From Octopus sinensis (Eukaryota), in contig NW_021831287.1 in assembly GCF_006345805.1 (NCBI RefSeq), positions 124,001 to 188,000 on the forward strand: DNA of 64,000 bases. Reading direction: 5' to 3'. The position numbers were made by a program, and so were the translations under genes. How positions within the stretch are numbered: the stretch's first letter is position 1; each line of letters opens with the position of its first letter. The notes below the pieces were generated by a model. The model made no database searches, was not told the DNA's origin, and saw nothing but the letters and a program-made list of their open reading frames with translations. This document shows, in pieces, positions 1,089 to 55,021 of this stretch.

Positions 1089-1090
1089 AC

Positions 1091-5340: not shown

Positions 5341-5480
5341 CTAATAAAATAATTCTGTGTAAATGAAGATAATAGATTTTATTATGAAACAAAAAGCGTC
5401 CAAATTTATAATTGATATAATAATTGTTTTTTATGAATTTAAACTCGTAAATAATTTTAATAAAAATAATTAATATTAAG

Positions 5481-5497
5481 CACGTTATATCTTGTTG
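5481..5497 (+). promoter_or_regulatory. Candidate ribosomal-protein promoter motif (cacgttatatcttgttg)
   Basis: Same CACGTK-ATAW-CTTGTTG layout as at RPL13A, ending 6 nt before the ATG. Confidence 0.5.
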
Positions 5498-5503
5498 TCA
5501 AAC

Positions 5504-6037
5504 ATGGGTCGTATGTATGGAAAAGGGTTTGGAGAAACCATTGATTAGAGTAGGAAGGGAAAGTCTCGCTCTGTTCTGCCAATCCAGAAGTCTCGTCCAA
5601 AATGGGTGGGTCTGACTCCTCAGGAAATTGAGACAACAATCTGCCGTCTGGCCAGAAAGGGTCAGAAACCCTCACAAATAGGTTTGATTATGGAAAACAT
5701 CCTCGAGGAGTAACACTTCGAGACTGCTACGGAGTGCCGAATATATCTCGGTGTGCCTCCAACAAGGTGTTGAGGATCCTCAAGAAGAATGGTTTGGCAC
5801 CGAAATGTCCCGAGGACTTGTACTCGCTGATCAGCAAGGCCATCAGCATCCGCAAACACCTCGAGAAAAACAGGACGGACAAGGATTCCAAATACAGACT
5901 CCTCCTCACCGAGAGCAAAATCCACCGTCTGGCGAGATATTACCGAACCAAAAAAGTGTTGCCTCCCACATTTAGATAGTTCGGGTTGCTTGTTCACGTT
6001 TAGTACCTCCACCAATGCCTCCTCTATCATATCTTAG
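5504..6037 (+). CDS. RPS13: 40S ribosomal protein S13 (uS15), copy 1; 4 exons, introns of 27, 26 and 25 nt
   Basis: Spliced CDS of 456 nt (151 aa): [14 protein letters not shown]...PSQIGVTLRD...[45 protein letters not shown]. Confidence 0.95.
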
Positions 6038-6149
6038 ACTAATTGTTTCGTTTTAATAAATGTCGTTCCTTTTAAAATTTTTAGCTATATATGAATTACA
6101 TTGATACCAACTTGTAGAATATGTACAAGTGGATTAACTTATGTATTCG

Positions 6150-6650
6150 TAAGGGAAAATGCTAAGGCCAATTTTTAAGGTTGCATTACTAATCGGGTGA
6201 TTCCAGTTTCTTTAAGGACGGTCCTCATTTTTTCCTGACGTTCTTCCCTTGTTTCTGCACATTTTCTATAGGGGCGCGTCGGGTTTGTCAATGTGTGTGT
6301 CTTCCCCCTCATTTCTTCGCAAGATCCTCTCAAAAATGGCAACATTTAGTTGTTCGTTTGGTTATTCTAGAGTTTTGCAGATTCTTATTGAATTTTGGAA
6401 AATTTTTTCCAGATTGGTGTAGCTGATTGTATTTCCTCACGCTGCGCAGGCGTAACTAATTGTGGGTTCTATTTACTGCTTATAGACGGTTTTGAGAGTG
6501 GCGAGGTTTGTCAACTGCCTGCATTTTTGAAGGAAAACTCTGAGAATGTTGATTTTCTTCATACATCCCATGATCACATTATTCACTTGCTGCGAGAATG
6601 ACTATGGGTGTTGTATATTACTCCTAAAATATTTTGCGATTTTTGGAATG
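6150..6650 (-). mobile_element. CR1/L2-like LINE fragment (post-RT region), decayed
   Basis: The minus strand gives LKTVYKQ*IEPTISYACA, IENVQK and EDRLKETGITRL-like motifs with stops. Confidence 0.55.
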
Positions 6651-7047: not shown

Positions 7048-8505
7048 AGTAATAGGGCAGAGCAGACGTGCAAATATGTGGAACCTGCCATGAAGACTGT
7101 AAATGAGACACCAAGAGAGAAAATGTTTGTTTATTTGTGAGACTTCTGATGTGTGTGGTAGACGACGGATTCACAAACAAGTCAGTAAATATGAAACAGA
7201 TTCAAGAATCATACCAAAAATGTAGCAGTCTACCCCCATTTCATCTCCACGAAAATTAAGGGCAAAGTAATATATATTAACAAATACAGTTTAATAAATG
7301 TATTAATTCAATGTCTAACCAATGAGATATTGACAATAAAATTTGACGCTTAATTATAATGTTTCCACTTGTGCTGCTTTTTGTTCACTTTGGGATTCAA
7401 AGTGACTGTGATTTAACACAAAGGTTTTTAAAGAATTGCTCAATTAAAATTAGATCTTTGAGAAATTGTGAATTCAATGCAGAAAATGTTGCCGAACATT
7501 CAAAATCTATTATTATTGCGAACGACATTACTTTTCCCAATGGAGAAATATTCTCTAATTTAACTAACTTGGAGGAATTGTAATCATCATTTTATTAATA
7601 TTAGTATCTGTGGTGGAGTCTCGTTAACGAAAATACTAAACAACTCATTTGATAAATTGGATCGCTTATCCTCTATGTACATTTAAATATTTTGAATTAT
7701 TAGAGGTCTGTTTTCGTGTTATGGACTTCGTTACCTAGATGTAGAGGCCTTTGCAAATGTCATCAGTTTACGATCTTTGTAAAAATCGCATACTAATATT
7801 ACAGTGTAATGCCCTCATATGCCATTTTTCAGTCGCCAAAAATTAGTCGTCCGTTAACCCTTATGTATTTTAAGTTACTCATTGTATAGTATGTATGCGC
7901 GCCAGAAAATGTGCATTTTTACCAATGGATCTCAACCCACAACGTACACTTAAATATTCTCATATAAGTATTACGAATTTCAATCTTCCGCTGACTATAT
8001 TATTAACTGGCAAAAGTTTTAGAATAGATGCGGATTCAGGAATCGGAGCAAGACTAAGAACCGGGAATGCATATGGTGGGTTAGTTCACTCACAATAGAT
8101 TGCAACCTCTGTCGCTATCCAGCATCAAGAAATATGCTGTGCAGAAGGGATTGTGCATAATTAAAAATTCGGATATTACTAATTAACTAACTTGATTATT
8201 CATTCTGATATTTCCTTGTTCCCCTACTTATTTCTAATTAATGTTATATGCATACTTCCTGCATAAATATATACACTTCTTGAGTAGTCACTATTTAGCA
8301 TTCGACCAAACTTCGTTGCTAAGCGATCAACATTCTTCCAGTATTGCCGAAAATAAATGAATGTTCTGTATGAAACACAGAAACCCCTGGGTTATTTCTA
8401 TGCAAAAACCAATGGGAGGATTCAACAGCATCAACGTTGGGATCATTTAAACAATCAAAGAGAATTGCATCCAATGGTTTTTCATTATTTACTCAATTAA
8501 AGGGT
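7048..8505. repeat. Inverted segmental duplicate of about 36725-38165 (LRR gene block)
   Basis: Reverse-complement match over about 1.45 kb, roughly 90-95% identical by eye. Confidence 0.9.
7359..8160 (+). CDS. Secreted leucine-rich-repeat protein resembling a glycoprotein-hormone-receptor (LGR) ectodomain, copy 1; 7 exons
   Basis: Signal peptide MFPLVLLFVHFG. Short exons flanked by phase-2 micro-introns give LEELFICGGVSLTKILNNSFDKLDRL and LRYLDVEAFANVISL. It ends GNAYDCNLC...MLCRRDCA*. Confidence 0.7.
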
Positions 8506-10021: not shown

Positions 10022-10515
10022 TAGGGGGAAGGAATACAAAATGGGATATTACAGGACTATATATACAAAAATGTAATCATTTATTATGAAGGTTATTTCA
10101 TAATTATTTGGTAATGTAATTTTGTTGTCTCAAATCGAATTGATCGAACCATGTTCATTTAATGAATAAAAAATGTTATATTTTATGATCTCAAAAATCG
10201 TTCATTATTTGATTAATAATACAGTAAACTATTTTTTTCATTCTAGGTTCCTGTCGAATTTGCGACAAATTTTTGAAATGGAAAATTTCAGAATTTAAAA
10301 TATTTATTAGAAACTTCTCGTAGATAAAAACAGCCAAATTCATGCATAAGTACAACCGAATTATTAAATTTTATCGAAATAATATTCAGTTCCAATTTTC
10401 TTCTTTTTGCTATTTAAAATTTTTTTTTCGAAGATGCATCTTCCCAAGCCATTTTTATAAATAGAACAATGTCTGTGAGTTTTAAATGTTTATATGGTTT
10501 ATATATCGACATGTT

Positions 10516-11100
10516 TTATTTTTCCAATAATCCAGTAAGATACTCCAATTTTTGTTTATTAAAATGCACTTTGAACGTTTTACTAATACCAAAATCCATT
10601 GGCTGAATTATTCTTGTATCTAAGCAATGAGAAGGACAATTGTCTATAAGAAGCAAAATTTTTTCTGCCTTCAAAAGGTAATCAAAGTTTATTATCCAGT
10701 TAGTAAAAATATATACGGCCATCCATGCTCTTTCAAAAACTGCAATACGAAACAAAACACAGATAATCATATTTGTTGAAAAACCTTGGCATTTTTGATT
10801 TTCTAACCAATAAAAACTTCAATTCAAGATTTCCAAACATATTTGCGCATAACATCATAAATACTCTATCTGTGATGTTTTTATATTCTCCAAACAGTCA
10901 TGTAAATACTTCTGGATAGAAGTAGTATATTCCAGTTTCATCCAGGTTAAATGACATTGAAAGTTCTTAAATTTTTTTGAGAAACCCTTCAATGTCGACA
11001 CTTATGTAATTGCACATTTGTTTATGTAATTTCCTTATCTGAAATATATTTCTGCTTAAGTTATGATAAAAATCCATGTGAGTTTTTGAATTATTTAAGA
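10516..11100 (-). mobile_element. pogo/Tigger (DDE_1) transposase fragment, decayed
   Basis: KILLLIDNCPSH and IIQPMDFGISKTFK motifs. Confidence 0.7.
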
Positions 11101-13158: not shown

Positions 13159-14697
13159 ATGTCCAGTGAGGCAATCAACGATGACTGGGAGAATAAGAGC
13201 TTTATTTCACGACATAAAAGATTATTTCGATACTCATTCATCCCCTTCCTATGTTTAAGCAGCTTCGGTAACATCAAAGACATAACTTTCAGGGAGTTAT
13301 TACTGCTTTGATATTCCCGGTGCTATTCAAGCAACAATAAAAAGTGATTTAAATATAAACTCAGCCACTTTTATGGGCTTCTACACATGGTATGCACTTC
13401 CCAACGTCCTCATGTGTTTTGTCGGCTCATTCCTCGTCGACCGCTACACTGGTCTCCCTCTCGGAGGAATTCTCTGCATACTTTTTCTGCTCCTGGGACA
13501 AGCCGTGTTTGCTTCGGGAGGATTTTCCCACGTGATTTGGGTCATGTATTTGGGAAGGGTCATTTTCGGGATTGGGGGAGAGACTCTTTCCAGTGTCCAA
13601 AACTCATATGCAGCACTCTGGTTTAAAGGTTCAGAACTCAACTTTGTCTTTGCTCTCCAACTAAGTTTTGCACGTGTGGTTAATTCCTTATATAATTCGC
13701 CCAGGGCAGCACTGCCTGTATGAAATCAATGTTTTATCTCTACAAACTAGCCCGTCATATCCAAGCGGGCTACCATCAGTTGGGCATAGCCTTGTACTTG
13801 GCTGTATTTGTTTGTGTCATTTCTTTACTTACTTCTGCCATTATGGCAGTCATGACTCGGACTGGGCAAAGGAAGGGAGGTTTATTTTCTGTATTTATAT
13901 GGCAGTGATTAAAACATGTACAAAGGATGTACAAATTGTCTGTTTGAGGGATGTTATTCACTTTGGGACTTCTTTTTGGCTAATAACTGGAATTATTTGT
14001 ACTTTTTATGTGGCGATACTCCCCTTTATAGGAATAGCACTGTTTTTTGTATTTTTTATGATTTAGATCATTATGTATGCTCAAATATGAACTGTCTTTG
14101 GACACTGCAACGACTGTGAATAGGTTTGGATTAATTTTTAGTTATTTTAGTCTTATTTATCTCGTTTCTGCATTTTCTTCGCCTTTTGTGGGGCTGAGTA
14201 TTGATAAAACTGGGAGGAATTTGATGTGGGTGATTTTGTCGATTATTTTGGGTATTTTGGGGACTTTTTTGATTGCTTTTACTTTTGTGTCTCCGTTTGT
14301 GCCTGTGGTTTGTCTGTTTTGTTTATTTTAGATAATTTTGGGTGTTAGCTATTCGTTTTTGGCTGCCTCACTGTGGCCTATTGTGGCCTATATTGTAAAA
14401 TTGTCACATTTAACGACTGCCTATGGAATGTAGTGGAATATTAAAAAAGTTTAGATTGCAGTCGATCCAAAATTTGGGATTGGCTGGAGCTTCTTATTTG
14501 GTTGGGATGATTGTCGATAAGTGGGGGTACTTTGCGATGGAATTGTTCTTCTTGGGTAATTTATATTGTGCTTTGTTGATTGCTGTGGCCTTGTTCTTTT
14601 TTAATGGAAGTAAGGGTGGTTGTTTGTGTTTGTAGAGAATGGAATACTTAATGCCAATGCCAGTCAAATAAAAGAATATTTGGATAATGATTACTAA
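13159..14697 (+). CDS. MFSD1: Major facilitator superfamily domain-containing protein 1 (lysosomal transporter), multi-exon
   Basis: FGSYYCFDIPGAIQ...FMGFYTWYALPNV...LGRVIFGIGGETLSSVQNSYAALWFKGSELNFVFALQLSFAR, with micro-introns. Confidence 0.9.
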
Positions 14698-14913: not shown

Positions 14914-15723
14914 ATGTGTTCTAATGGGAAAGAAATAGACAAATTCGAACAAATATTTTTAAACAAAATAAAAACAATTTCCGAAGGAATTTCTCAAATC
15001 TCTGAAAGTGAGGATCACCTCGATCAACTCTCAAATGAAATTGACGAATTAATAAAATACACCACAAATTCCCTCCATTTTATTCCCGCCTTTACAATTC
15101 GAAAAAGATTGACAGAAATCAAAGCACTTCAAAACAAACTCGAAATTATTCGCCAAAAACGTCTCAGCCATAAAAAATTTAATTTTAAATCGACACTCAA
15201 TACCAAAAAATCGCCAAAAAATATTCAAAAAACGTCAAAAATTTTAGTCGAGGAATCATTTGGTTTTCATTCCCGCCAAAATGAGACCCTTACTTTATTC
15301 AGAGACGAACTTGTGAATAAAAATATAGTTCTGAAAAATTTAAAAAACTGCCACGTTTATTTGTTTGGACCAATGGCGGGAATTCAATTAATTGATTTGG
15401 AGAGCACAAGAGTACACAGCGGGCCAGTCTCCTCGTCAGTGTTGGCTCAAAATTGTCGAGAATGTCATTTTTATGTGGCTTGTTTACAACTGAGGATATC
15501 TTTTAGCAGAGACTGCAGATTTAATAGTCACGTGGGTAATCGAGCAGTGTTGGAGAATTCGTCGGGGATTGGATTTGGGGACTACTCTTATGAGTATGAG
15601 GGAGTTGAGGAGGATTTCGAGTTTGTTGGCTTGAGAAAAGGGGAGAGTAAATATGCAGGTGTAGATGACTTTAATTGGCTCAATCAACAAGAAAAATCAC
15701 CGAATTATTACTTTTTTGAATAA
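14914..15723 (+). CDS. TBCC: Tubulin-specific chaperone C, intronless
   Basis: N-terminal coiled region with KKFNFK, then a C-CAP/TBCC domain (LKNCHVYL, GPVSSSVL, ACLQLRI, VDDFNWL...SPN). Confidence 0.9.
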   Translation: MCSNGKEIDKFEQIFLNKIKTISEGISQISESEDHLDQLSNEIDELIKYTTNSLHFIPAFTIRKRLTEIKALQNKLEIIRQKRLSHKKFNFKSTLNTKKSPKNIQKTSKILVEESFGFHSRQNETLTLFRDELVNKNIVLKNLKNCHVYLFGPMAGIQLIDLESTRVHSGPVSSSVLAQNCRECHFYVACLQLRISFSRDCRFNSHVGNRAVLENSSGIGFGDYSYEYEGVEEDFEFVGLRKGESKYAGVDDFNWLNQQEKSPNYYFFE

Positions 15724-22200: not shown

Positions 22201-22499
22201 TTATCTCACATTGACTGCAGATGAAAGCATTTTTCCACTTCGTTATGGTGTCAATTTCTTACAGACGTTTATTTTAAAAACATAATATTCATTAAGTGCT
22301 TCGGGACATACAATAAATAATGAATGTTCTAAAATATTAATTATATTCATCGTGTATTTGATGTTATGATTCACAATTTCAGTATCACACCCATCATATG
22401 AGTTATTTTCAGTTCCATCCAATGCTATTTGCACTAAATCTGAAATATGAGTCTCCAAAAGTTAAGCTTGAATGTTTTGATTAATTTCGAAATCATTAA

Positions 22500-23459
22500 T
22501 TCTTAATTCATTTATTTTATTAGTTATTGTGTCTTTTGTTACTCGATTCCATGCTTCTCTTACGAATATGATAACTTGTCGCATATTTATCTTCAATAAT
22601 GTCACATTATAATTCTCATAAATATCGCCAATACAAATTGCTTCATAAAGGACATTTGATTAAGATAATTTAAAAGAATTGATGATCTCCATATCAAGGG
22701 ATTGAAGAATGGTAGTTGTATTCTTTGGAAGTTTGAGGAAAATAATATTTGAATAATTTAGACATCTATGACACGTAGAATTATCAAAAAGAATTAAAAT
22801 TTTTCGATTTTGTGAAAAAATGTATAATTTAAAATCATTACTTCACAATCCTCAGTTCTTATATTTTTGAGGCATCTGAGTGATTTATACTTTCCAATAA
22901 CCAAAGGTTTTAACTTTTCACCTTTAATAAAACAGCATAAAAGGATTATTATTTTTTACAAATTTTTCTACCAAAGAAATTTTCATTTTTAGCGACAAAT
23001 GATTTACTCGGATTCTTTTTAATGAAAAGGCAGGTTTCATCACAATTAAAAATGTCTTCCATGTTGAAATTATTTATAGTCATCATACTCTTCGTAAAAT
23101 TTTTTAATTAAATTTTGTCGGAGAAATCCTTGTTTAGTTTCCATTTTTATTCTAGATACTCCTCCCTTCCCGACTTTGAACAGCTTGGATATTTCCTTTT
23201 CATATATGGTGTTTGCCAACGCCTCAAAAATTTTTTCCTTAAAGTACAGGAAAGTTTTTTTGGCAAAACCACACGCAATAATGAAATAATGCATAAAAAT
23301 TTCATTTATAAAATGGCCCAATAAGCGGGAATTTTTTAATTTAGTATTCTATTGGTAGAAAATTGGATAAACTGCTATAAAATGGACTTTAGAAATAAAA
23401 GTGCCCCAAATACAGAGGGTGCCCCAAGGCCAGGGTTTTATTGGGGCGGGGTCGGACTG
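22500..23459 (-). mobile_element. pogo/Tigger element, 5' end with terminal repeat, decayed; related to the 33177 element
   Basis: End ggggcggggtcggactg followed by TA; shared gagggtgcccca subterminal motif; KLFKVGKGGVSRIK HTH region; DDE_1 remnants near 22600-22800. Confidence 0.65.
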
Positions 23460-26640: not shown

Positions 26641-27827
26641 CGGGGCGGGACACATCGATAGGATAATATATACTTCAAAAATATTATACTGCAGATTGTT
26701 GATAAGATCGATTTTTTAATTTGTGAGAACAAAAAAAGCGGCAACTGTTGATAATTTGATCCAAAATCTTAATGACGAAAGAACTAATTTTATGTTTTTT
26801 ATTTCTAATGATATTGTTTTAATTCATTTATGTTTTTTTTTATTTTTAAAATTCTACATCCTAATTTTTTCCACGTCAATTGCGTAGCTCATACATTACA
26901 TACTTATTAGGAAAAACCAAAAGCAAAAATTGTTGTTTTCAGAAATTGGAATTCAGCCAAAGTCGTATTGACTATAAATTTGATTTAATTGATTTTTGCA
27001 ATTGCAACCTGAAGTTCGTAATTGCCAAATTGACTTGAAAATTGTATAGATAGAGTTCCTGATTAAAAGTTACATATTATTAAAGTCAAATCTTTCTAAT
27101 TTACCACCTCTATGATTTGTCACTCTCACTTTTTTACCAAAAAAATAAAATTCTGAAAATTCAAAAACTTCAATTATTCAGCATTTTCTAGATATTCACA
27201 CAACCAAACTTCGTGGATACCCTTAAAAAATTCAATTTATGGTTGATGGATATAGGTATAAAGATAAAAGGAAAAATATTATTGATTTTACCACCTCATT
27301 TTTGCCACTATTTTGTTCGGTCCCGTTAGTGGCAATAAATAGAGAGTTGACTGTATTCAAAAAATTGATTAATATGTTTGAAAACGAGGAAATTTCAGTA
27401 ACTTCTAAGAAAGTGCAGTAAAATATGATAGATTAGTACAAAGTTGTTCTTAAATAGTAATTTATAGAAAAATATTATTCCAAAACTGTCAGCCATTCTC
27501 AGCATTTGTCGAACGATGCTTTTGGTAATTCAGGAGTTTTTTGAGGTTAAATAGAAAAATTTAGTACGCAAAATCTGTAAACTTACGTTATGTGAATTAT
27601 CAGTAAATAGTTTTTAAAATTACTTGTATCTTTATTATCTGAAATAAAAGTTTAAACTAAGAACTTTACCAGTTTAAATTAAGAAAAAATAAAGTTAAGT
27701 TTTTTTTTAACTTTAAAGTTAAAAATCTTGGTTTATAGGTAATAAAGTCAACTTTTTAAAGATAAAAGTGTTTGCCCTATTTATAACACAAAATTAAATA
27801 TAACAAAACATCCAAAAATGAAGTAAA

Positions 27828-28597
27828 TTAGGAATAGAGAGAAAGAATGGACTTGAGCTTCTCATACTGTGGATTATTGTCCTTGTCCAACAACTCCCTC
27901 GCCTGTCGATTGAGTTCCTTGGAGGGCATAAAACAAGACTAAACATTTCTGGCCTTCTTCTGCTCGTAGAAGACGGCGGCATTGGCTCTGCGCTTGTCCT
28001 CCAACTCCTCCACCAAGTCGGCACTCTTCCAGCCAAATCGACGGGCCACTTGCCCCAACACGGTGAACTGCCGTCAGAGGGATGACCAACCTTGCGGTGG
28101 GGCTTCAAGCATACCGCCTTCACAGCACGCGGGAAAACCATTTTCTTTGTTCTCTGGAATCGGAGAGGAACTCCTTCGAAGGTGGACAAGCGGGAGAAGG
28201 CCTCTGATCCGCGGGATGTCCGATAGGGGATCATTCCTTCTCGTTATGCTCACTCACAACCTCGGACTGCCTTACGAAACATTCCCCCGGGGGCTCGGAA
28301 GTGGAGTGGTCCCTTCTTTGGGTTTGTGTTGGTTCTCTTGTGGAGATACGACTGGAATTTCACTGAGGATTTAAATGTCGGGACTACATTTGTTCTTCCT
28401 TTCTGACCCTGAGACGATCAGTTTCTCACATCGAAGTACCACCACTTCTCTCTTTGCTGAAAGGCATTAAAGGGCTCTCATACTTGTGAGGAGTAGTTTG
28501 GCGATTATACTCGCCAGTCTCCCTTCTATATGATTGCTGGCATCCACAATTAGAGGCTAATATTCCATACATCGAGGTATACCTTATTACTGTTCAT
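27828..28597 (-). CDS. RPL13A: 60S ribosomal protein L13a, copy 2, intact
   Basis: Same exon structure as copy 1; intron 2 is 27 nt instead of 28; C-terminus QYEKLKSILSLYS*. Confidence 0.95.
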
Positions 28598-28599
28598 GT

Positions 28600-28616
28600 C
28601 AACAAGTTATCACGTG
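28600..28616 (-). promoter_or_regulatory. Candidate RP promoter motif, RPL13A copy 2
   Basis: Reverse complement is cacgtgataacttgttg. Confidence 0.5.
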
Positions 28617-29908
28617 GCTGATAATTTATTATTTTTAAATAATTATTCTTTTTCCCCATTATTTAAAGCTATTAATAATAACCTTAATTAATTTTCAAAA
28701 AATTGTTATGATCGCTATTTTTAGGAGTTTACCTGATGATAAAAAATTAATTAACTAATTAATTGCCTAAGTCCTAAGCCATTAAAACGAACAAAAATGG
28801 CACTCCACACATCTCCTCCCCTTTTTCCTCCCATTTTCTGGCTCTGTAGATCTTCGAAAAAGTGCAGTCCGGCACCTCTAGATGACTAAATGTCAGAAAA
28901 AAACTGGATCGTCAATAATCAAACAAATACTCTTCAGACTCCTCTTAAAAATAGTAAACTGCATATAAACCTGTAGAGACTTATCTACACTAATGTATGT
29001 CGGTTATATGAATTTTCTCTGGCTGATTATGCTATGGATGTTGGAATATTAATGTCGGGGGTTTAATTCCGAAGGAAGCAAGTCTGCAGCTGGGGTCAGT
29101 TCCAACCCGTGAGGCGACGAGTCCATCTGGCACGACACAGATGTAGAAAGGAGATCTCCTGCCTTCCCTTGATCACATCACCAATGAAAAAATCTCCATT
29201 TCGTAAAACCCTTCCGAAAACAAATTATGTGGGGTGAGCGACGGTAGGAGGCTGACAAATGGGAACTGGGCACATCAGATATTCCCCACCTCTTTTTAAA
29301 TCCGGAAGACTGTATTAAAGATTTGGAGGCTAATGCTGATCGGCACAGACATTTCCTTCTTTTCTTGGCTTCTTCATTCGATTAGTTAGCTATAACTGTT
29401 TCTGCTGGGTTTGCTATGCAAGCTTGGGGGTTAATAAATAAAATGAATCTTCATATTTTTGAGTATTTTAAATGAAAAATTTCAGCTAAATTTGGTAGAT
29501 CTAAAAAAGTTTTCAACCACAAATAAAAATTATAAATGGATTTTAACAGTCATTGATGTTTATACTAGGCTTTGAAACATTTTATTCAGATTTGCACTTC
29601 TTCATAAATTATGAAGGCAATTGGACCAACACAAACCTTGGAAAATTTTGCAATCGAATAATAGTTCAGATTTTAAAAATTTATCTTTTAAGAAATCTAT
29701 GCGAAGAGTTTAACGCACTTCAAATACATAAAAGACAAAACAATTTTTTGACACAAGTTAAAATAAACTTTTCGTTGTGACTGAATAAATTCAAATCTCA
29801 ATTCTATCGAGATCATAAAATCATTCCTTTATTTAATAAACCCAACTCAAACAAAAAAAATTGAGTTTATTAGTATAACCGAATAATGTTAGTGGAGTAG
29901 AATCAGGA

Positions 29909-33058: not shown

Positions 33059-33176
33059 CATTGCATCACAGAAACAATTTTCTCTATATCTTATCATTTT
33101 TATTCTCTTGATTCTTATCTTCACAGGACTTGTTCCCAAAAATTCTTCATCTTTGTTTTTGAAAATTTTATAAGTA

Positions 33177-35054
33177 CAGTACGACCCCGGTTTGGGGCAG
33201 CATTTTTATCATAGTGCCCCAAAAAGCGGGGGTGCCCCAAAATGCGAGGGTAAAGATTTTTTGCTTTTATTTTCTCCTCAATAGATTTTTATTGCATTTT
33301 AGACTATAAATTAAAATTATTTAATATTAATAAAAATTCTAACATAGTCCTTTCTTAATAAAATTAAAAATTTTAATAAATCCAACAAAAAATACTATTA
33401 AAAGTAATCAGTATTTTCTCACCGAATTGGTTTTTTTTCAGTTCTCCTGATAGGTTTTTTCTAAATTCGTAGTAGATTTTCAAAAATTGTGGACATGTAC
33501 TGAAAATATTATCTTCTAGAGAATTCACGATGTTTATGATTTCTTTAATTGATGATTTTTTAGATTCATATCCATCATAAGTAATTTTGTCCTCAATAAT
33601 ATCTGTCGAATCCATTGAAATAACATCTGAAATCACGTCATCTATTAATTCTTCGTCCAACTGTACATTATCCGAAATTTTTGATCTGTTTTCATTTATT
33701 TTCTGCCAGCAATTAATTATCGTTGTCTCTGACATCATTTTCCATGCCTCCCCGACAACTGTAATGACTTGTCTAAGATTGACATTATTCAAATTCAAAT
33801 CAGAAAGCTGTTCTTTTTCAAATATAAGAGTAAAATCAATCAGTTTATTGAAATAGAGGGACTTGAAGGATTTTATTATTCCCATATCTAGGGGTTGAAT
33901 TAAAGCGGTCGTATTTTTGGGAAGAAAAAGTAAATAAACATTGGAATATTCTGTATTTCTGTGACAGCTCGCATTATCCAGTATTAAGACATTTTTCTCT
34001 TTTCATTGATCATATCTTGATTTACTTTCCATAACCATTTCCCAAAAATATCACTAGTCATCCACGAATTTTTTGATGCAGCATATAGTACTCCGTGATC
34101 CTCAGCGTTAAAATTTTTTAAACACCTAGGAGATTTGAATTTTCCAATTAATAGAGGTTTTAACTTTTCACCAAGTGCATTACAACAAAGGAGAAGGGTA
34201 ACTTTCTCTTTGCTCATTTTAATTCCATTGCATTTGTCATTAAATTGAACAAAAGATTTCGACGGCGTTCGCTTTATGTATAAAGCTGTTTCATCACAGT
34301 TAAAAATATTTTCACTTCCTACAGTTTCCAAACAGTTGTCATAATCAGCAAAAAAATTGGAAACCGTAGAAAGGTCAGATGAATTCTTTTCTCCACTTAT
34401 AGTTTTAAATAGCAACTCGTGTCTTTTCTTGAACCGGTCTAGCCATCCATTTGATGCCTTAAATGATTCATAATTTATCTTTTTAGATAATTTTTTTGCA
34501 ATCAGTTTTAAGATAGTTCCAGAAATTGGAAGAAATTCATCTCTCAGACGTAGAAAAGTTTCAAAAACTAATCTATCTAATTCATTATTTGGATCATGTG
34601 ATTCCTTGATTCTATCGGATTCAGTTAATCCCGCGTCAAAATAATAAACAAAATTTTGTTTAATGCGAGAAATAGTACCTGTAATTAATAATTAGTTAAA
34701 AAAGATACCTTTGCTCGTTTTATACTTTTTAGCAAGATCTCTTTCTGAAAATTGACCATGTTTTATATCTTTAGCGATTTTAATTTTTGTTTCATAATTA
34801 ATCTTTGAATTCTTTTTACGAACCATACTAAAGTCAAAATAAACACGTGAAATAATAGTATTAATTAATAATTAATAAATAAACTAACATTTTGTAATTA
34901 AATAAATTAAATAAGTGCCCCAAACCGGGGTCATCAAAAATAAATAATAGAATGAAAAATTTACTGTTTTCAAAAACTGCCCCTAAAAGCGGGGGTGCCC
35001 CAAAACCCGAGGGTGCCCCACCCATGGGGTCTGCCCCAAACCGGGGTCGTACTG
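33177..35054 (-). mobile_element. Full-length pogo/Tigger transposon; transposase 34826..33373 with one 30-nt intron and one frameshift
   Basis: Perfect 24-bp TIRs cagtacgaccccggtttggggcag with TA on both sides; FKASNGWLDRFKKRH, IFNCDETAL, KVTLLLCCNALGEKLKPLLIGK, AWMT-like SWMTS, LILDNASCH and LPKNTTALIQPLDMGII. Confidence 0.92.
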
Positions 35055-35199
35055 TACAATTTTCATTATCATTTGAAACCGGAGAGTCATCCGGAGTGTC
35101 CTGTTTTGCCCAACTGTTAAATACTTTATCAAGCAATTCGTTACTGTTGTTCTTGTATTTTTTAGGGTAACAATGGAAAGAAAAGAAAATAACTAGAAT

Positions 35200-36725
35200 G
35201 CCACAGACTTGAGGGTCAGTCCGACAAAGACGCTTGCGAATCGAGAGGTAGTTCTTCCCCCTCTGGTCATTGGTCTTTGATGCGATTTTTTCGCCAACCA
35301 GCCGTAACAACTTATCGGCCTCTTTACCGACCAGGCCTGTGGTTTCGAAGGCGAGGGCCACGAACTCATAGGCCTCTGAAAGCTGAGCGTATTTCAATAT
35401 TTTCTTTTCCTCAGCAAGTGCGCAAACATAGCCTGGCGAATAAGCCGTTCTGGACAACAATGTCTCCAACAGGGAATCACACAAATCAAGTCCTAAACAA
35501 GAGACTTACCTCCCTTGAATGGGATTGTAGTCATCTCATCGAGACGTTTTCCATCACCCTGAAAGAGACCAACCGGTTGCAGGATAGACGGAAATCCCGC
35601 GGAATCAAAAGTCCTCTTAATCACTCCATTGAGTAGAGCATTGCGCAAAAATCAACCACCACTCCTTAACAAGACAAGACATGTAATCCGTTTGAAGGGA
35701 TCATAAAATCACATCAGCGGTTGGCATATATCAAGTCAAAGTCAAATACACACTCCGATTCGAACAACCTCGTTCTCCAAAAGTACACCGTTGGATGCCA
35801 ACAAAAGAGCGTTTAACCAATCTCCCGATTAGGGCTGGCAGGTGCAGTTCAAAAAAGCTAGTTGCATCTGATCGGCTTGCGAGCAAAGGCTTTTCAAGAG
35901 GTGTGAACAGTAACAGGGTATTTTGTAAACTCGCCGAGTTTGGGTGAGTTTATAAAAAGAGAGCGAACGACATTTCCAGAAGCGGACAATGAAGAGAGAT
36001 AGCAAGGCAAGATCTGCACAAGAACGAACCCCGATACCCCCAAAGCGGAGTGGGAGCGCAGCAGGAGAATATCCCACTATAGTAAACAAAGTGTTCAGAA
36101 GGAATTGTAGCGACAACGCAACAGCGTCATAAGCCAGAAGTTCTTGATGTAAACGATAACAATGAGATATGCGAAGCAAATAGGTCAGGCGAAAGATATA
36201 AAGTTTTTGAGTAAGAATAGCCCCAAATGAAACTCGAAATGTCGGATTCGGGTGCACAGAATCAAAATCTTTTTTGTTGCGAGGCAATAGTCTTCGCAAC
36301 ATGTTCATCACAAATCGGGGAACCAAGAATCACAAGATCTCCAAAAGCAGTTAAACAGAAATCATCAATTCTCTCCGAAAGGACCATGGAGGCATTATTT
36401 CGGTGTTTTTGGTGGAAAGTCAAATTACTTCACATTTATCTTCGTTTAATGAAGCCCAATTTTCGCAAATTCGGATTTTTCACCCTGTTGGATTCCACAT
36501 TCCTACCTAATGACTTTCCCGGAAAACAGCAAGTTGCTTGGAATAGAATATGCAAGAGAAACTATTGGAAATAACTCGGGACAGAGTTGGGACACTGCCT
36601 CGAGCATGTGATCCCTCCTGACGCTATTGAAAGCATTCTTAATATCAAGTTTGAAAAGAAAGGGAACATTCTTTGGCTTGGAAAACGACAATTGGCGGGT
36701 AGCGTTGGCTAGTGCTTCGCAAGCC
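35200..36725 (-). mobile_element. CRE-clade retrotransposon, 5'-truncated (RT to endonuclease), decayed
   Basis: KLDIKNAFNSVRRDHMLEAV...YSIPSNLLF, LPLRFGGIGVRS, AEEKKILKY and ALAFETTG. Confidence 0.85.
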
Positions 36726-37054
36726 CCTTTAATTGAATAAATAATGAAAAAACCATTGGATGCAATTCTCTTTGATTGTTTAGATGATCCCAACGTTGAT
36801 GCTGTTGAATCCTCCAAAAATAACTCAGGGGTTTCTGTGTTTCATACAGAACATTAATTTATTTTCGGCAATACTGGAAGAATGTTGATCGCCTAGCAAC
36901 GAGGTTTGGTCGAATGCTAAATAGTGACTACTCAAGAAGTGTATATATTTATGCAGGAAGTATGCATATAACATTAATTAGAAATAAGAAGGGGAACAAG
37001 GAAATATCAGAATGAATAATCAAGTTAGTTAATTAGTAATATCCGAATTTTTAA

Positions 37055-37856
37055 TTATGCACAATCCCTTCTGCATAGCATATTTCTTGATGCTGGATAG
37101 CGACAGAGGTTGCAATCTATTGTGAGTGAACTAACCCACCATATGCATTCCCGGTTCTTAGTCTTGCTCCGCTTCCTGAATCCGCATTTATTCTCAAATT
37201 TTTGTCAGTTAATAATATAGTCATCGGATGATTGAAATTCGTAATCCTTATATGAGAATATTTAAGTGTACGTTGTGGGTTGAGATCCATTGGTAAAAAT
37301 GCACATTTTCTGGCGCGCATACATACTATACAGTGAGTAACTTAAAATACATAAGGGTTAGCGGACGACTAATTTTTGGCGACTGAAAAATGGCATCTGA
37401 GGGCATTACACTGTAATATTAGTATGCGATTTTTACAAAAATTGTAAACTGATGACATTTGCAAAGGCATCTACATCCAGGTAACGAAGTCTATAACACG
37501 AAAACAGATCTCTAATGATTCAAAATATTTAAATGTACATATAGGATAAGCGATCCAATTTATCAAATGAGTTGTTTAGTATTTTCGTTAACGAGACTCC
37601 ATTACAGATACTGGTATTAATAAAATGATGATTACAATTCCTCCAAGTTGGTTAAATTAGAGAATATTTCTCCATTGGGAAAAGTAATGTCGTTCTCAAT
37701 AATAATAGATTTTGAATGTTCGGCAACATTATCTGCATTGAATTCACAATTGTTCAAAGATCTAATTTTAATTGAGCAATTCTTTAAAAACCTTTGTGTT
37801 AAATCACAGTCACTTTGAATCCCAAAGTGAACAAAAAGCAGCACAAGTGGAAACAT
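37055..37856 (-). CDS. Secreted LRR protein, copy 2
   Basis: Same 802-nt span and splice sites as copy 1, with an open spliced frame. Confidence 0.7.
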
Positions 37857-38227
37857 TATAATTAAGCGTCAAATTTTATTGTCAATAACTCATTGGTTAG
37901 ACATTGAATTAATACATTTATTAAACTGTATTTGTTAATATATATTACTTTGCCCTTAATTTTCATGGAGATGAAATGGCGGTAGACTGCTACATTTTTG
38001 GTATGATTCTTGAATCTGTTTCATATTTACTGACTTGTTTGTGAATCCGTCGTCTACCACACACATCAGAAGTCTCACAAATAAACAAACATTTTCTCTC
38101 TTGGTGTCTCATTTACAGTCTTCATGGCAGATTCCACATATTTGCACGTCTGCTCGCCCTATTATTGAACTCTTTGGAGTTGATTAGATTTATTATTATA
38201 ACACATTCCGTAAAAACATAAACAAAG

Positions 38228-39660: not shown

Positions 39661-39910
39661 CGGGGAAGACACACCAGCCGTGCCCCTACAGAAAATGTGC
39701 GGAAACAAGTCAGGGAAAAATGAGGACCGTCCTTAAAGAAACTGGAATCACCCGATTAGTAATGCAACCTTAAAAATTGGCCTTAGCATTTTCCCTTACG
39801 AATACATAAGTTAATCCACTTGTACATATTCTACAAGTTGGTATCAATGTAATTCATATATAGCTAAAAATTTTAAAAGGAACGACATTTATTAAAACGA
39901 AACAATTAGT

Positions 39911-40444
39911 CTAAGATATGATAGAGGAGGCATTGGTGGAGGTACTAAACGTGAACAAACAACCCGAACTATCTAAATGTGGGAGGCAACACTTTTTTGG
40001 TTCGGTAATATCTCGCCAGACGGTGGATTTTGCTCTCGGTGAGGAGGAGTCTGTATTTGGAATCCTTGTCCGTCCTGTTTTTCTCGAGGTGTTTGCGGAT
40101 GCTGATGGCCTTGCTGATCAGCGAGTACAAGTCCTCGGGACATTTCGGTGCCAAACCATTCTTCTTGAGGATCCTCAACACCTTGTTGGAGGCACACCGA
40201 GATATATTCGGCACTCCGTAGCAGTCTCGTAGTGTTACTCCTCGAGGATGTTTTCCATAATCAAACCTATTTGTGAGGGTTTCTGACCCTTTCTGGCCAG
40301 ACGGCAGATTGTTGTCTCAATCTCCTGAGGAGTCAGACCCACCCATTTTGGACGAGACTTCTGGATTGGCAGAACTGAACGAGATTTTCCCTTCCTACTC
40401 TAATCAATGGTTTCTCCAAACCCTTTTCCATACATACGACCCAT
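39911..40444 (-). CDS. RPS13: 40S ribosomal protein S13, copy 2, intact
   Basis: Same 534-nt span as copy 1; the coding differences I found are synonymous (aag/aaa, cgc/cgt, tct/tca, gaa/gag). Confidence 0.95.
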
Positions 40445-40450
40445 GTTTAA

Positions 40451-40467
40451 CAACAAGATATAACGTG
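40451..40467 (-). promoter_or_regulatory. Candidate RP promoter motif, RPS13 copy 2
   Basis: Reverse complement is cacgttatatcttgttg. Confidence 0.5.
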
Positions 40468-40568
40468 CTTAATATTAATTATTTTTTATTAAAATTATTT
40501 ACTAGTATATATAACCTATTAAAATAACGTTTTCATTTCTAATATTTAAATATATTATTTTAAAATTG

Positions 40569-49065: not shown

Positions 49066-51518
49066 CAGTCAACCCTCATTAATCTGAAAAATTCGAATCG
49101 ACTTTCTTATGAAGGAATCTAAAATTTATATGATTGTTAGATAAATGATCAAATTAGTGATCAAATTACTAATCTGTTTATAAACACAATTATTTATTGA
49201 AAAAATCGAATTTGTTATATTTTGAGAAAAGCAATTCAAACAAGAACTTGATTTAATGACAATTTGAATTGAATCTTACGATCCTCGGTGCCCCCATGGG
49301 GCCTTCTGCCCTCGAATGCTCACTGGCTGGAAAAATTTCCCACTTATCCAAAATGATCGAGAAGCTTAAAGTCATCAAGCCTCATGTGGCTCTTTTCCTT
49401 CTCCGAAACCACTTTTCCGTCCCTAAGATCCTTTACACCCTAAGATGTGCACCCTGCTTTGAAAGAGGCGACCTTCTTTCCGACCTTGACAATATCCTCA
49501 GGCTCGGTACAAGCTCTCTTTGCAATCTGGCTTTCGACGATCCAGGCTGGACTCAGGCATCCCTGCCTGTGCGCTGGGGCGGCCTTGGCTTGAGATCCTA
49601 TTCCGATCTTGCCCTCCCCGCATTCCTATCCGCTTATCACGCTTCTCGTACTCTCTCAGACATCGTTCTTAGAAACCTCCCCGAACGGAAATTGTCTGAA
49701 GATTACTCTGCTGCCCGTGGTCGGTGGGAGGCTCGGTTTGGTTTGAAGCTGCCCAATTCTCAGTCAATGGGACGAAATCTCTTGTCAGGCAATTTTCGAA
49801 GGCCTTCTTCCTGTCTCCAATCAACACCGTGTCGCTTGCCTCCGTGCAGGTCGCTGCGAAGGCAGCGGTGTCTGGTTAAAGGCTCTCCCTTCCATCGGGA
49901 ACCTGGTGGACAAGGAATGCCTAAGAATTGCAATCTCCCTCCGTGTTGGGCTGAAAATCTGCCAGACGCACAAATGCCGTTGTGGGGGAACTGTTGACGA
50001 GTACGGTTTGCACCCCCTCGCTTGCCGGCGGAGTGCCGGTCGTGCCCCCCGTCACAGTGAACTCAACTCAGTCATACAGAGAGCCCTCGCTTTAGCTGGC
50101 ATCCCGTCAATCCTTGAACCTGTTGGACTGGATAGAGGGGATGGCAAACGCCCAGACGGCATGTCCACCTTTCCATACGAGCAGGGGAAATCCCTTATTT
50201 GGGATTCTACCTGTTCGGACACGTTCTCGCTGGGAAATCTCGCTCTGTCCGTCGCCAATCCTGGGCACGTTTCGAGACAGGCCGAGGAGCGAAAGATTCT
50301 CAAGTACGGCCACCTTTCCAACTCGCTGTTCTTTACTCCAATTGCCGTGGAGTCCTCCGGGATTTTCGGCCCCAAGACACTCCGCTTCCTTCGCTCGCTC
50401 GGTCGACGGATTTCAAGGACTAGCCACGATCCAAGAGAGTATTCTTGGCTCATGAACGTCTGTCGATTGCTGTGATCCGAGGGAACGGCTTCGCCATTCG
50501 CGAGGCTGGCCGGTGTCTCGTGAGGCCTTTAATTAGCTTGGCTATCTTTTTACATTTCACAATTAAAATATTTTGAGTTAAAAAAAATTGTATTGCATCA
50601 AATAAAGTGGTTGGGCAAATATCGTAACTCTGGCCATCTTCATCATTAAGTATGATATCTTCAACAGTGTATTCTTCTTTAAACAGTGCAATGATTTCAT
50701 CGTCATCAATGACTTTTTCTGTTTTAAGCATATCTTCTTCAATCATAACTTGGTCTAGCTCATTATTGTGTACCTCAATAATTGGATCTGAAACAACTCT
50801 CCTTCAGCATAATGCTCATCCAGACCTTGAATAATTCTATCAGCATCATACATTGAATTTGCTTTTCGGTGAAGAACTTTCAATTTCACATTGAACCGAT
50901 TTTTGAATCTATATAGCCATCTTTTGCTAAATTGCAAATCTTCGATATTTATCTTTTGTCCAAATTCCTTTTCTTTAGTAATAATAATTTCATCAGTCAG
51001 GTAACATCCATTCGAAATATCCATTCTATCAATAAATTCTCAAGCAAATAATGATTTTTAGAAGCTTGTCTATAGTAAGTGTTGGAGCTCTCACTATTTT
51101 TCCATTGTTTTTTATTTTTCAAAATTTGAGATAAAGTAGAATTTCCTAGGTCCAGGTTTAATTCTCTTCTGATAATTTGAGACAATTCATTCAGCGACAT
51201 TTTCCTCGAATCCTTAATTTTACAAATCTGTTCTTTTAGATGAATTTTGATTTCAGTCCTTTTTCTAACCATTGAATTACAAAAAGTGTGCTGTTAATTA
51301 AATTTGAACAAATTAATTAAAAAAATTAATCAACAAAATTATTTTTTTAATAATAATAAATAAAATTAATCCGAAATTATATTAATCCTAGCGTTCGGAT
51401 TGCGGATTATTTAATTTTCGGAGCATTGAATCAAATTTGGCAGGAAAAAATTGGAAAATTTATAATTTCAATTAAAAAAATTCGGATTATTGAAGTTCGG
51501 ATTAACGAGGGTTGACTG
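49066..51518 (-). mobile_element. Tigger-like transposon interrupted by a CRE retrotransposon
   Basis: TIRs cagtcaaccctc(a/g)ttaatc(t/c)gaa with TA on both sides; MVRKRTEI...LENLLIEW and FSKRWLYRFKNRF. Confidence 0.8.
49269..50525 (+). mobile_element. CRE-clade retrotransposon, 5'-truncated
   Basis: ILGAPMG, ALFLLRNHFSVPKILYTLR, QASLPVRWGGLGLRS, CRCGGTVDEYGLHPLAC, KRPDG, AEERKILKY, PIAVESSG and RLSIAVIRGN. Confidence 0.9.
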
Positions 51519-54093: not shown

Positions 54094-55021
54094 CTAATGA
54101 TTTGTGTTCTGATCTGGCCCTTCCAAGGACACATCTCCTGAATAAGAACAGAGACTTCTCATCGATGGGGATGCCGGGGCTGACTGCGTATGACTGACCT
54201 TCATAGACTTTGCAGGAGGACACCGAAGAGGGGAAGCGGGAGCTGAGCTGAAAATAATCAAACAAACACTCACTCTGTCACAGGATATGACTTTTTATAA
54301 AACTTTCTTGTACTCGACCTCCTTTTCATAAATGCCGAAGACATCAAAAAATTATATTGGGATGGTTCAAAGCACCAATAGGACCCCTTTCCAAGATCAT
54401 TTGGAGATCTGGAGATTCTTATAAAGTTTGGACTCAACGACAAATTATGTCGGATAGAATTCTAAACCTCAAAAAATCAAAAGACCTGCCAACTTCTGTC
54501 CCCGGGACTGAAGTAGGAATAATTCTTGGTTATGTAATTGTATATTTCGCTGAGAGTGGCTCGCTTATTTGGGGAGGAACCGATGGCCTGGGCGATTATT
54601 TGTGCGTATGAATAAGGCGGTTTAGTTTTTGTGTCGACGGGCTCTTCCTCTTTTGGAGATTCGAGTGGAGTGGACAGAGGAAACAGATTTGATTCAAAAT
54701 AAACGACGATTGTTGTACTGGGGAAACGGAAAGAGGACCTGAAGGTCAATAATAATTGGGGAACCTTGGATTGATGGGGTAAAGTTGCTGGTTTTCTGTG
54801 ACGAGTATTTCGTCGACAAAAACACCATTTTTGCTCAAACATTTAATGTAAAAAATGTTATTTGAAAGAAGAATTGAAAAATGTTTTCGGGAAATAAAGT
54901 TGGATGAAAAAACTGGTAAATCGACCCCTTTTGAAGAAGCAGCTCGTCCGATCGTAAAAATATATTTGTTCATATAATACATAATATCTGTATGCTTAAA
55001 AATTGCCAACGGCTGCGACAT
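54094..55021 (-). CDS. FOXK: Forkhead box K transcription factor (FHA + forkhead)
   Basis: FTIGR...ISRKH...CLSKNGVFVD (FHA); KPPYSYAQIIAQAI...WQNSIRHNLSL...GKGSYW; SAPASP. Confidence 0.9.

What the first reader, a model, noticed from the sequence alone, without database searches (positions are those of the whole stretch)
33177..35054. pogo transposase with a host-style 30-nt intron absent from a sister element
The N-terminal HTH frame is interrupted at 34679-34708 by gtatc...tacag (30 nt, with an in-frame stop); removing it gives KTSKGTISRIK. The related element at 23.2 kb reads straight through the same spot (KVGKGGVSRIK). Both junctions carry AGGTA, the duplication signature expected from new intron creation at an AG|GT proto-splice site. 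TIRs are perfect and only one frameshift (near 33985) breaks the ORF, so the family is young. It suggests recent micro-intron gain, or loss, inside a mobile element, and possible splicing control of transposition.
Basis: partly seen in the sequence, partly recalled or inferred. Interest (0 to 1): 0.7.

Follow-up and report, generated by a model that had tools for sequence, protein, structure and literature searches.

The report
Micro-intron in a dicyemid pogo transposon
A young, probably still active pogo/Tigger "jumping gene" in what looks like a dicyemid parasite genome (filed under its octopus host) has its transposase gene split by one 30-base host-type intron. The intron is almost certainly real, but it is inherited and shared with a second, much more divergent transposon family, so it is not a fresh gain.

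Summary
Window 33177-35054 (minus strand) is a complete pogo/Tigger DNA transposon with 24-nt perfect TIRs and TA duplications. Its transposase gene is interrupted at 34708-34679 by a 30-nt GT..AG insert carrying an in-frame TAA. Removing the insert restores a motif (SKG|TISRIK) that is gap-free in every homologue examined.

Seven further copies (99.2-99.8% identical, unrelated TA-flanked sites) were fetched from the 'Octopus sinensis' assembly GCA_006345805.1. All carry the insert. One of them, and the family consensus, give an intact 466-aa ORF only after the insert is removed.

Host genes in the window have verified 24-26-nt introns. The host gene tested has no close octopus orthologue. The DNA is therefore best read as dicyemid (Dicyema-like) parasite DNA.

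- The 23.2-kb 'sister' is a decayed, truncated relic, 35-40% identical.
- A second family (~55% identical) has a 25-nt GT..AG intron at exactly the same codon and phase.
- The AGGTA 'signature' has only two free positions (~10% by chance) and is absent from that second family.
- Intact outgroups have no intron there, so the intron was gained within this pogo lineage, well before family A's current burst.

No transcript evidence was available, and splicing control is untested. This is a new member of a known kind, of moderate interest.

The parts
33177..35054 (-). Complete pogo/Tigger-type DNA transposon, family A, 1878 bp (family consensus 1881 bp)
   Evidence: Perfect TIRs. Pfam DDE_1 2.8e-38 and HTH_Tnp_Tc5 3.2e-13. 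Seven more copies at 99.2-99.8% identity in unrelated TA-flanked sites.
35031..35054 (-). 5' terminal inverted repeat CAGTACGACCCCGGTTTGGGGCAG
33177..33200 (-). 3' terminal inverted repeat (24 nt, perfect)
35055..35056 (.). TA target-site duplication (partner at 33175-33176)
   Evidence: The six other full-length copies are TA-flanked on both sides; the rearranged copy L001_a has TA at its 5' end only.
34709..34826 (-). Exon 1: codons 1-39 plus the first base of Gly40 (start of the first HTH)
34679..34708 (-). 30-nt phase-1 GT..AG micro-intron (83% A+T, in-frame TAA, CTAAT branch-like motif)
   Evidence: Removal restores an HTH motif that is gap-free in all aligned homologues that include this N-terminal region. 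Weak HTH profile matches (CENP-B_N, HTH_23, HTH_28) appear only in the spliced form. Present in 8 of 8 copies.
33398..34678 (-). Exon 2: rest of the 466-aa transposase (HTH_Tnp_Tc5 and DDE_1; catalytic D168, D274, D304; consensus-frame stop TAA at 33400-33398)
33990..33991 (-). Private 1-nt deletion (TT to T) that frameshifts this copy inside the DDE domain; it may be an assembly error
   Evidence: Other copies read KRKIVLILDNASCH. Sequence context.
33412..33413 (-). Second private 1-nt deletion; it changes the C-terminus from KITDYF* to KILITFNSIFCWIY*
22225..23459 (-).
54462..54485 (-). Host comparison: 24-nt GT..AG intron in a forkhead gene (WQ|NSIRHNLS)
   Evidence: The Forkhead domain is contiguous across the junction, E 3.3e-32.
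13679..13704 (+). Host comparison: 26-nt intron in an MFS transporter gene (a second one lies at 13880-13905)
   Evidence: The MFS_1 match spans both junctions.

Best explanation
Window 33177-35054 is one copy of a very young, probably still active pogo/Tigger (IS630-Tc1-mariner) cut-and-paste transposon. It sits in a genome with ultra-short introns, most likely a dicyemid mesozoan (Dicyema-like) whose DNA is deposited under its host, Octopus sinensis.

The single gene encodes a 466-aa transposase with an N-terminal HTH, a Tc5-type HTH and a DDE_1 catalytic core (DD29D). It is split by one phase-1, 30-nt GT..AG spliceosomal micro-intron inside Gly40, in the recognition region of the first HTH.

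Inferred mechanism: the host spliceosome must remove the intron to make transposase. Unspliced mRNA ends at an in-frame TAA after 44 codons.

The intron is an inherited feature of this transposon lineage. It is in all 8 family-A copies sampled. A second family about 55% identical at protein level carries a 25-nt intron at the identical codon and phase. Intact outgroup elements lack it. So it was gained after the lineage's ancestor was intronless, and long before family A's present burst.

Shown: anatomy, copy number, intact ORF after removal, host intron style, shared position.
Inferred: actual splicing, current activity, single origin of the A and B introns, host identity.
For: - GT..AG ends, 30 nt, in-frame TAA.
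- Family B's insert is 25 nt, which breaks the frame, is also GT..AG, also has an in-frame TAA, and sits at the same G|G of the Lys-Gly codons.
- The motif SKG-[TASM]-[IVL] is gap-free in all aligned homologues that include this N-terminal region.
- HTH profile hits appear only in the spliced form.
- 8 of 8 family-A copies carry the insert, one with a tolerated 1-nt loss in its T-run. Copy L009 and the consensus give an intact 466-aa ORF ending KITDYF* only after removal.
- The full-length copies have TA duplications in unrelated flanks, so they arose by transposition.
- Host genes in the window have verified 24-nt and 26-nt introns.
- Published values: Dicyema sp. median intron 27 bp with two thirds under 30 bp (PMC6543705); D. 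japonicum lives in O. sinensis, genome GC 36.7%, 49% repeats (PMC6736024); among animals only dicyemids and myxobolids have introns under 30 bp, with reduced splice motifs (PMC13644364).
- A host TBCC gene's best non-self hit is 31% identical (a scallop), with no octopus orthologue.
- Outgroups P0003 and P0005 are uninterrupted ORFs on their contigs.
Against: - No transcript or junction read was available. No spliced product exists in the protein collection. A metagenome scan for spliced or unspliced junctions found nothing.
- The order of families A, B and intronless C is unresolved. Identities are 57/55/55%. A+B has 70% NJ bootstrap and wins 58% of identity resamplings. Quartet counts are 9:6:7. 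A single origin of the A and B introns is therefore favoured but not shown.
- Host identity is inferred from intron size, composition, a divergent host gene and host-parasite biology. It is not based on a match to a named Dicyema sequence.
Confidence: 0.75

Rival explanations
1. The intron was created recently within family A at an AG|GT proto-splice site, leaving an AGGTA duplication, and the related element at 23.2 kb shows the pre-insertion state.
For: AGGTA occurs at both junctions. Elements D, C, E and L006 read straight through the site. Short direct repeats are a known mark of some intron gains (established knowledge; Huff et al. 2016 is cited in PMC9942856).
Against: - All 8 family-A copies have the insert and none lacks it.
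- Family B, about 55% identical, has an intron at the same codon and phase with only AGG shared at its junctions.
- Only 2 of the 5 repeated bases are free, so the repeat is expected about 10% of the time by chance.
- The intron is not a copy of adjacent exon sequence: 13 of 30 matches by hand count, not a tool result, about what A+T-rich sequence gives by chance.
- Element D is 35-40% identical and decayed, so it is not a sister.
Confidence: 0.08
2. Parallel gain. Families A and B each acquired a micro-intron independently at the same AAAG|G proto-splice site, which would imply an active intron-creating process in this genome.
For: A, B and intronless C form an unresolved trichotomy. In the N-terminal 52 columns, A and B are each closer to C (52%) than to each other (44%). 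The two intron sequences share no significant similarity. The CDS has only about 9-11 AG|G sites, so a coincidence is about 10% if gains are confined to such sites.
Against: It needs two events where one suffices if A and B are sisters (70% NJ bootstrap). The coincidence is about 1 in 70 if any AG can serve. The reverse route, loss of the intron from C, cannot be excluded either.
Confidence: 0.13
3. Not an intron. The 30 nt is an inactivating insertion carried by non-autonomous copies that an insert-free master element mobilises in trans.
For: No RNA evidence of splicing. The insert carries a stop codon.
Against: - 0 of 8 sampled copies lack it.
- One copy is otherwise completely intact.
- Both ends are canonical GT..AG, and the length and composition match host introns.
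- An independent family has a different GT..AG insert at the identical nucleotide position, which random insertions would not produce.
Confidence: 0.04

Closest known systems
Tigger / pogo superfamily transposons (NCBI labels the copies 'tigger transposable element-derived protein 6-like')
   Same: HTH + HTH_Tnp_Tc5 + DDE_1 architecture, DDD triad with 29-residue D2-D3 spacing, short TIRs, TA duplication, C-terminal KITDYF motif.
   Different: The closest intact relatives, and Tigger elements generally (from knowledge), are single uninterrupted ORFs (P0003, P0005). This lineage carries a 25-30-nt intron in the first HTH.
Drosophila melanogaster pogo, the founding element (Tudor et al. 1992; recalled from established knowledge, not checked here)
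   Same: A pogo-type transposase gene made of two ORFs joined by removal of one short intron near the 5' end.
   Different: The intron is about 55 nt in a host with ordinary small introns. I could not fetch the sequence, so whether its position matches Gly40 here was not tested.
Dicyemid host micro-introns (PMC6543705, PMC6736024, PMC13644364)
   Same: Length 24-30 nt, T-rich, GT..AG, weak extended splice motifs. Verified examples in this window's forkhead and MFS genes.
   Different: Here the intron lies in a mobile element whose outgroups are intronless. It is therefore a polarised gain, not a shrunken ancestral intron.
P element IVS3 (splicing-controlled transposition; established knowledge)
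   Same: Retaining an intron would yield a truncated, non-catalytic product, so splicing efficiency could in principle gate transposition.
   Different: There is no evidence here for regulated or tissue-specific retention. The retained product would be only 44 aa, not a repressor-sized protein. The transposon superfamily is different.
Introner elements and DSB-repair intron gains with flanking direct repeats (Huff et al. 2016, cited in PMC9942856; Daphnia gains, from knowledge)
   Same: An AG|GT-containing direct repeat at both junctions of the family-A intron.
   Different: The insert has 25 unique bases with no TIR or TE features. The repeat is largely forced by the splice consensus and the Gly codon. 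It is absent from family B.

Membership tests
pogo/Tigger (IS630-Tc1-mariner) DNA transposon | DDE_1 catalytic domain with D, D, D triad | tested here: met
   PF03184 E 2.8e-38, full-length match. D168, D274 and D304 with 29-residue spacing.
pogo/Tigger (IS630-Tc1-mariner) DNA transposon | CENP-B/Tc5-type HTH DNA-binding domains upstream of the catalytic core | tested here: met
   PF03221 E 3.2e-13. For the first HTH, only weak sub-threshold hits (CENP-B_N E 0.046), and only after the intron is removed.
pogo/Tigger (IS630-Tc1-mariner) DNA transposon | Terminal inverted repeats and TA target-site duplication; multiple copies at unrelated sites | tested here: met
   24-nt perfect TIRs and TA flanks. 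8 copies in different flanks.
Spliceosomal (U2-type) micro-intron of the host | GT..AG boundaries; length and composition within the host distribution | tested here: met
   GT..AG, 30 nt, 83% A+T. Host introns of 24 and 26 nt verified in the window. Published median 27 bp (PMC6543705).
Spliceosomal (U2-type) micro-intron of the host | Interrupts the reading frame, and precise removal restores conserved, contiguous protein sequence | tested here: met
   In-frame TAA. Intact 466-aa ORF only after removal. Gap-free homologous motif. Family B's 25-nt insert breaks the frame.
Spliceosomal (U2-type) micro-intron of the host | Spliced transcripts observed | not testable with these tools
   No RNA reads were accessible. 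No spliced product in the protein collection. 0 hits in the metagenome junction scan.
Newly gained intron (proto-splice-site duplication, introner or DSB-repair type) | Insert-free alleles or copies within the same family, or absence from the true sister family | tested here: not met
   0 of 8 family-A copies lack it. Family B has it at the same site. The intronless family C is equidistant, so its placement does not decide the question.
Newly gained intron (proto-splice-site duplication, introner or DSB-repair type) | Flanking direct repeat beyond what the splice consensus and coding sequence force | tested here: inconclusive
   AGGTA has only 2 free positions, about 10% by chance (reasoned). 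Family B shares only AGG.
Splicing-regulated transposon (P-element-like) | Regulated or tissue-specific intron retention that limits transposase | not testable with these tools
   No expression data.
Dicyemid (Dicyema-like) genomic DNA rather than octopus | Metazoan genes with introns under 30 nt; no close cephalopod orthologues; composition like D. japonicum | tested here: met
   Forkhead and MFS introns. TBCC best non-self hit 31%, a scallop. Window GC about 0.28-0.42 per 2 kb, mostly 0.30-0.39, against 36.7% published (PMC6736024). A direct match to a named Dicyema sequence was not possible.

The most novel reading that the evidence does not exclude
Micro-introns are being created de novo, possibly more than once at the same AAAG|G proto-splice site, inside horizontally acquired, originally intronless pogo transposons of a dicyemid. 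This is a lineage described as having a conservative exon/intron structure (title of Ogino et al. 2010, cited in PMC6543705). The sub-30-nt intron would then act as a gate: transposase could be made only where this unusual spliceosome removes it. That would throttle transposition through intron retention and would lock the element to micro-intron hosts.
Probability: 0.12. Interest if true: 0.6.

Novelty: new member of a known kind. Interest (0 to 1): 0.38.

Why it matters
Clear, polarised cases of intron gain in animals are scarce. Here the outgroups are uninterrupted ORFs, so this transposon lineage gained at least one intron while living in one of only two animal groups known to have introns under 30 nt. 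That gives a compact natural test case with 8 or more near-identical copies and one intact ORF. It could be used to measure micro-intron splicing efficiency and to ask whether an intron restricts a mobile element's host range.

On the practical side, large contigs (116-552 kb) of the public Octopus sinensis assembly and its RefSeq proteins appear to be parasite DNA. Their gene models are mis-spliced because they ignore micro-introns.

An intron in a transposase gene is not new in itself. Drosophila pogo, the P element, Tc3 and Ac all have them.

Tried and rejected
- A heuristic whole-window scan for ORF-restoring GT..AG segments, meant to give a host intron-length distribution. It was too noisy because frameshifted TEs dominate. 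I relied instead on three Pfam-verified introns and the literature.
- An empty-site test. The two flanks were joined and searched against the window and all fetched loci. Nothing matched except the flanks themselves.
- A metagenome scan for the exon junction with a 0-30-nt gap: 0 hits.
- A paper search for run ERR3671687, the source of the intact intronless relative P0003: 0 hits. Its organism is unknown.
- A possible second intron near the C-terminus (GTGAGAAAATACTGATTACTTTTAATAG). Rejected because other copies read straight through to the canonical KITDYF*.
- Tandem duplication of adjacent exon as the source of the intron. Rejected: 13 of 30 matches by hand count, not a tool result, about what A+T-rich sequence gives by chance.
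- Literature searches for the intron position in Drosophila pogo and for reported dicyemid contamination of the O. sinensis assembly. Nothing usable.
- Rfam scan of the window: no hits.

Full report
**1. What is at the coordinates**

On the minus strand, 33177-35054 is a 1878-bp element. It is bounded by perfect 24-nt terminal inverted repeats (CAGTACGACCCCGGTTTGGGGCAG) and by TA on each side.

From the ATG at 34826 the frame runs 39 codons. It then meets GTATCTTTTTTAACTAATTATTAATTACAG (34708-34679, 30 nt), which contains an in-frame TAA. The junctions are AAAG|GTATC and ACAG|GTACT. Deleting those 30 nt gives ...KKYKTSKGTISRIKQNF...

The conceptual protein matches Pfam HTH_Tnp_Tc5 (E 3.2e-13) and DDE_1 (E 2.8e-38, full length). 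Its catalytic aspartates are D168, D274 and D304, a 29-residue D2-D3 spacing.

Two refinements apply:
- The window copy has two coding 1-nt deletions, beside 33991 and beside 33413, not one.
- Roughly three quarters of the differences between copies are small deletions, mostly of one base and commonly in or beside short homopolymer runs. They may be long-read assembly errors rather than mutations.

**2. Whose genome this is**

Host genes in the window carry ultra-short introns.
- A forkhead gene has a 24-nt GT..AG intron at 54485-54462, between WQ and NSIRHNLS. The spliced product matches the Forkhead domain contiguously (E 3.3e-32).
- An MFS transporter gene has two 26-nt introns (13679-13704, 13880-13905). 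The MFS_1 match spans both junctions.

A single-exon tubulin-chaperone-C gene (14914-15723) has no relative closer than 31% identity, a scallop. It has no octopus orthologue.

Yet every close relative of the transposon lies on contigs of GCA_006345805.1, the 'Octopus sinensis' assembly.

The literature fits a parasite origin:
- Dicyema japonicum lives in the renal sacs of O. sinensis. Its genome is 67.5 Mb, 36.7% GC and 49% repeats, with a mean intron of 38 bp (PMC6736024).
- Dicyema sp. has a median intron of 27 bp, with two thirds under 30 bp (PMC6543705).
- Among animals only dicyemids and myxobolid myxozoans have such introns, and their splice motifs are reduced (PMC13644364).

I conclude, by inference, that the window is dicyemid DNA filed under its host. 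'Host-style intron' is then apt: 30 nt is at the upper end of the host's usual range.

**3. Is the 30-nt insert an intron?**

I could reach no transcripts, so splicing is inferred. The sequence evidence is strong.
- (a) It has canonical GT..AG ends, is 83% A+T against 70% for the CDS, and contains a CTAAT branch-like motif.
- (b) The site lies in the first HTH. In all aligned homologues that include this N-terminal region, the stretch SKG-[TASM]-[IVL]-x-R-[IL] has no gap. HTH profiles (CENP-B_N, HTH_23, HTH_28; weak, E 0.04-0.06) match only the spliced form.
- (c) I fetched seven further copies. Six are full length (one of them, L012, carries a nested insertion) and one is rearranged. They are 99.2-99.8% identical to the window copy. 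The six full-length copies are flanked by TA on both sides in unrelated sequence; the rearranged one (L001_a) has TA at its 5' end only.
- (d) All copies carry the insert. One has lost a single T from the insert's T-run.
- (e) Copy L009 (VCDQ01012107.1) and the family consensus give an uninterrupted 466-aa ORF ending in the canonical pogo C-terminus KITDYF*. This happens only when the 30 nt are removed.
- (f) Decisive point: a different family, B, has a 25-nt insert GTTTTTTATTAATGTAAGTTTTTAG at exactly the same nucleotide position and phase (AAA G|..|GC GCT = K-G-A-V-S-R-I-K).
  - Family B has TIR CAGTATAACCTCCATTTGGGGCA and is 1908 bp. Its two copies, L004 and L010, are 98.6% identical to each other and about 55% identical to A at protein level.
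  - Its insert breaks the frame and also carries an in-frame TAA.
  - Two unrelated GT..AG inserts at one codon position in two transposing families is what a maintained intron predicts. Random damage does not predict it.

**4. Is it a recent gain, absent from a sister?**

No.
- The element at 22225-23459 does read KVGKGGVSRIK straight through. But it is 35-40% identical to A over aligned columns, has multiple stops and frameshifts, lacks the Tc5 HTH region and has only one recognisable TIR. It is a distant relic, not a sister.
- Other families in the same assembly lack the intron: C (L003, ~55% identical) and L006 (~41%). So does the intact element E on Logan contig L005 (47%).
- P0003 and P0005 are verified uninterrupted ORFs. 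Other near-full-length relatives from metagenome and Logan contigs were not checked at the DNA level.
- The ancestral state is therefore intronless, and the intron was gained within this lineage.
- The gain predates the A/B split, or else it happened twice.
- The order of A, B and C is unresolved. Identities are 57/55/55%. A+B has 70% NJ bootstrap and wins 58% of identity resamplings. Quartet counts are 9:6:7. One gain, a gain plus a loss in C, or parallel gains all remain possible.
- With only 9-11 AG|G sites per CDS, a coincidental double hit is about 10% at best.

**5. The AGGTA 'signature'**

For a phase-1 intron in Lys-Gly (AAA G|GN), the left junction is AG|GT by necessity. The right junction is AG|G by necessity. 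Only the Gly third base (T) and the match between intron position +3 and the next codon's first base (A) are free. That is roughly a 10% coincidence. Family B shares only AGG. By hand count, not a tool result, the intron matches the adjacent exon at 13 of 30 positions, so it is not a duplicate of it. The signature is not evidence of recent creation.

**6. How it most likely works**

Shown by sequence: the domains, TIRs, TA duplications and multiple insertions of an autonomous cut-and-paste transposon.

Inferred:
- The primary transcript must be spliced by the dicyemid spliceosome to encode the first HTH and everything downstream.
- Retaining the intron gives a 44-residue peptide. The in-frame stop in a 3n intron fits the pattern known from other tiny-intron genomes (Paramecium; established knowledge).
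- Any regulatory use of retention, or a host-range lock, is speculation.

**7. Comparison and novelty**

Architecture and ends place the element firmly in the pogo/Tigger group. Introns in transposase genes are well known: Drosophila pogo itself, the P element, Tc3 and Ac (from knowledge). Dicyemid micro-introns are published.

What is new is modest: a dicyemid pogo lineage that acquired and kept a sub-30-nt intron, with an intact, evidently recent family. I rate it a new member of a known kind, with moderate interest. The main value is as a polarised intron-gain case and a handle on micro-intron splicing.

The apparent mislabelling of large parasite contigs and RefSeq proteins as Octopus sinensis is a useful by-product. 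For example, the models XP_029655427.1 and XP_029654418.1 splice around the micro-intron incorrectly.

Noticed in passing
whole window; L001-L004, L006, L009-L013 (GCA_006345805.1 contigs of 5-670 kb): The window and most of these contigs look like dicyemid parasite DNA deposited as Octopus sinensis; L006, on the 670-kb contig, was not checked for parasite origin. Evidence: 24-26-nt introns in metazoan genes, and a TBCC gene whose best non-self hit is 31% identical with no octopus orthologue. RefSeq Gnomon models on them (e.g. XP_029655427.1, XP_029654418.1, XP_029656091.1) are chimeric or mis-spliced because micro-introns are not modelled. I found no paper reporting this.
   Followed up: partly
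family A copies: window 33991, 33413, ~33366; L001, L002, L011-L013: About 21 of 28 differences between copies are small deletions, mostly of one base and commonly in or beside short homopolymer runs, against about 7 substitutions. This indel excess suggests long-read assembly errors, so several 'frameshifts', including the window's, may not be real.
   Followed up: partly
L001:3706-7464: Two family-A copies lie head to tail. The first has its last ~420 bp inverted in place (positions 1-1458 forward, then 1878-1457 reversed) and abuts the second, complete copy. This is either aberrant or nested transposition, or a misassembly.
   Followed up: no
L012:1273-2253: A ~980-bp insertion interrupts a family-A copy. 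It has a 10-bp duplication of the target (ATTTAAGGCA) and short inverted ends (GGCATTCTCAACC...GGTTGAGAAC). This is a different, unidentified DNA transposon nested in pogo.
   Followed up: no
one search hits P0010, P0011, P0013, P0016, P0019: Among named sequences, the closest relatives outside the octopus-labelled contigs are from microsporidian parasites of amphipods (Dictyocoela muelleri, Cucumispora dikerogammari; 39-48% identical). Unnamed metagenome and Logan contigs are also close (P0003, P0005). The pattern hints at horizontal transfer of this pogo clade among parasites and hosts.
   Followed up: no
window 10441-10743 (-), 50854-50970 (-); L003:5865-6421: Further short, decayed pogo-like fragments (29-38% identical to family A). 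Several pogo lineages have evidently lived in this genome.
   Followed up: no
window 951-1887 vs 27802-28737; 5455-6247 vs 39701-40493; 7060-8397 vs 36818-38155: Three pairs of long inverted interspersed repeats, 97-99% identical and relatively GC-rich, some with ORFs of about 130-146 aa. They are other young repeat families, consistent with a repeat-rich genome. The pogo copy itself sits inside a retroelement-like ORF (34861-35484).
   Followed up: no
window 40-522: A 21-nt tandem repeat of about 23 units. It is open in several frames (e.g. TTSTVPR x n).
   Followed up: no
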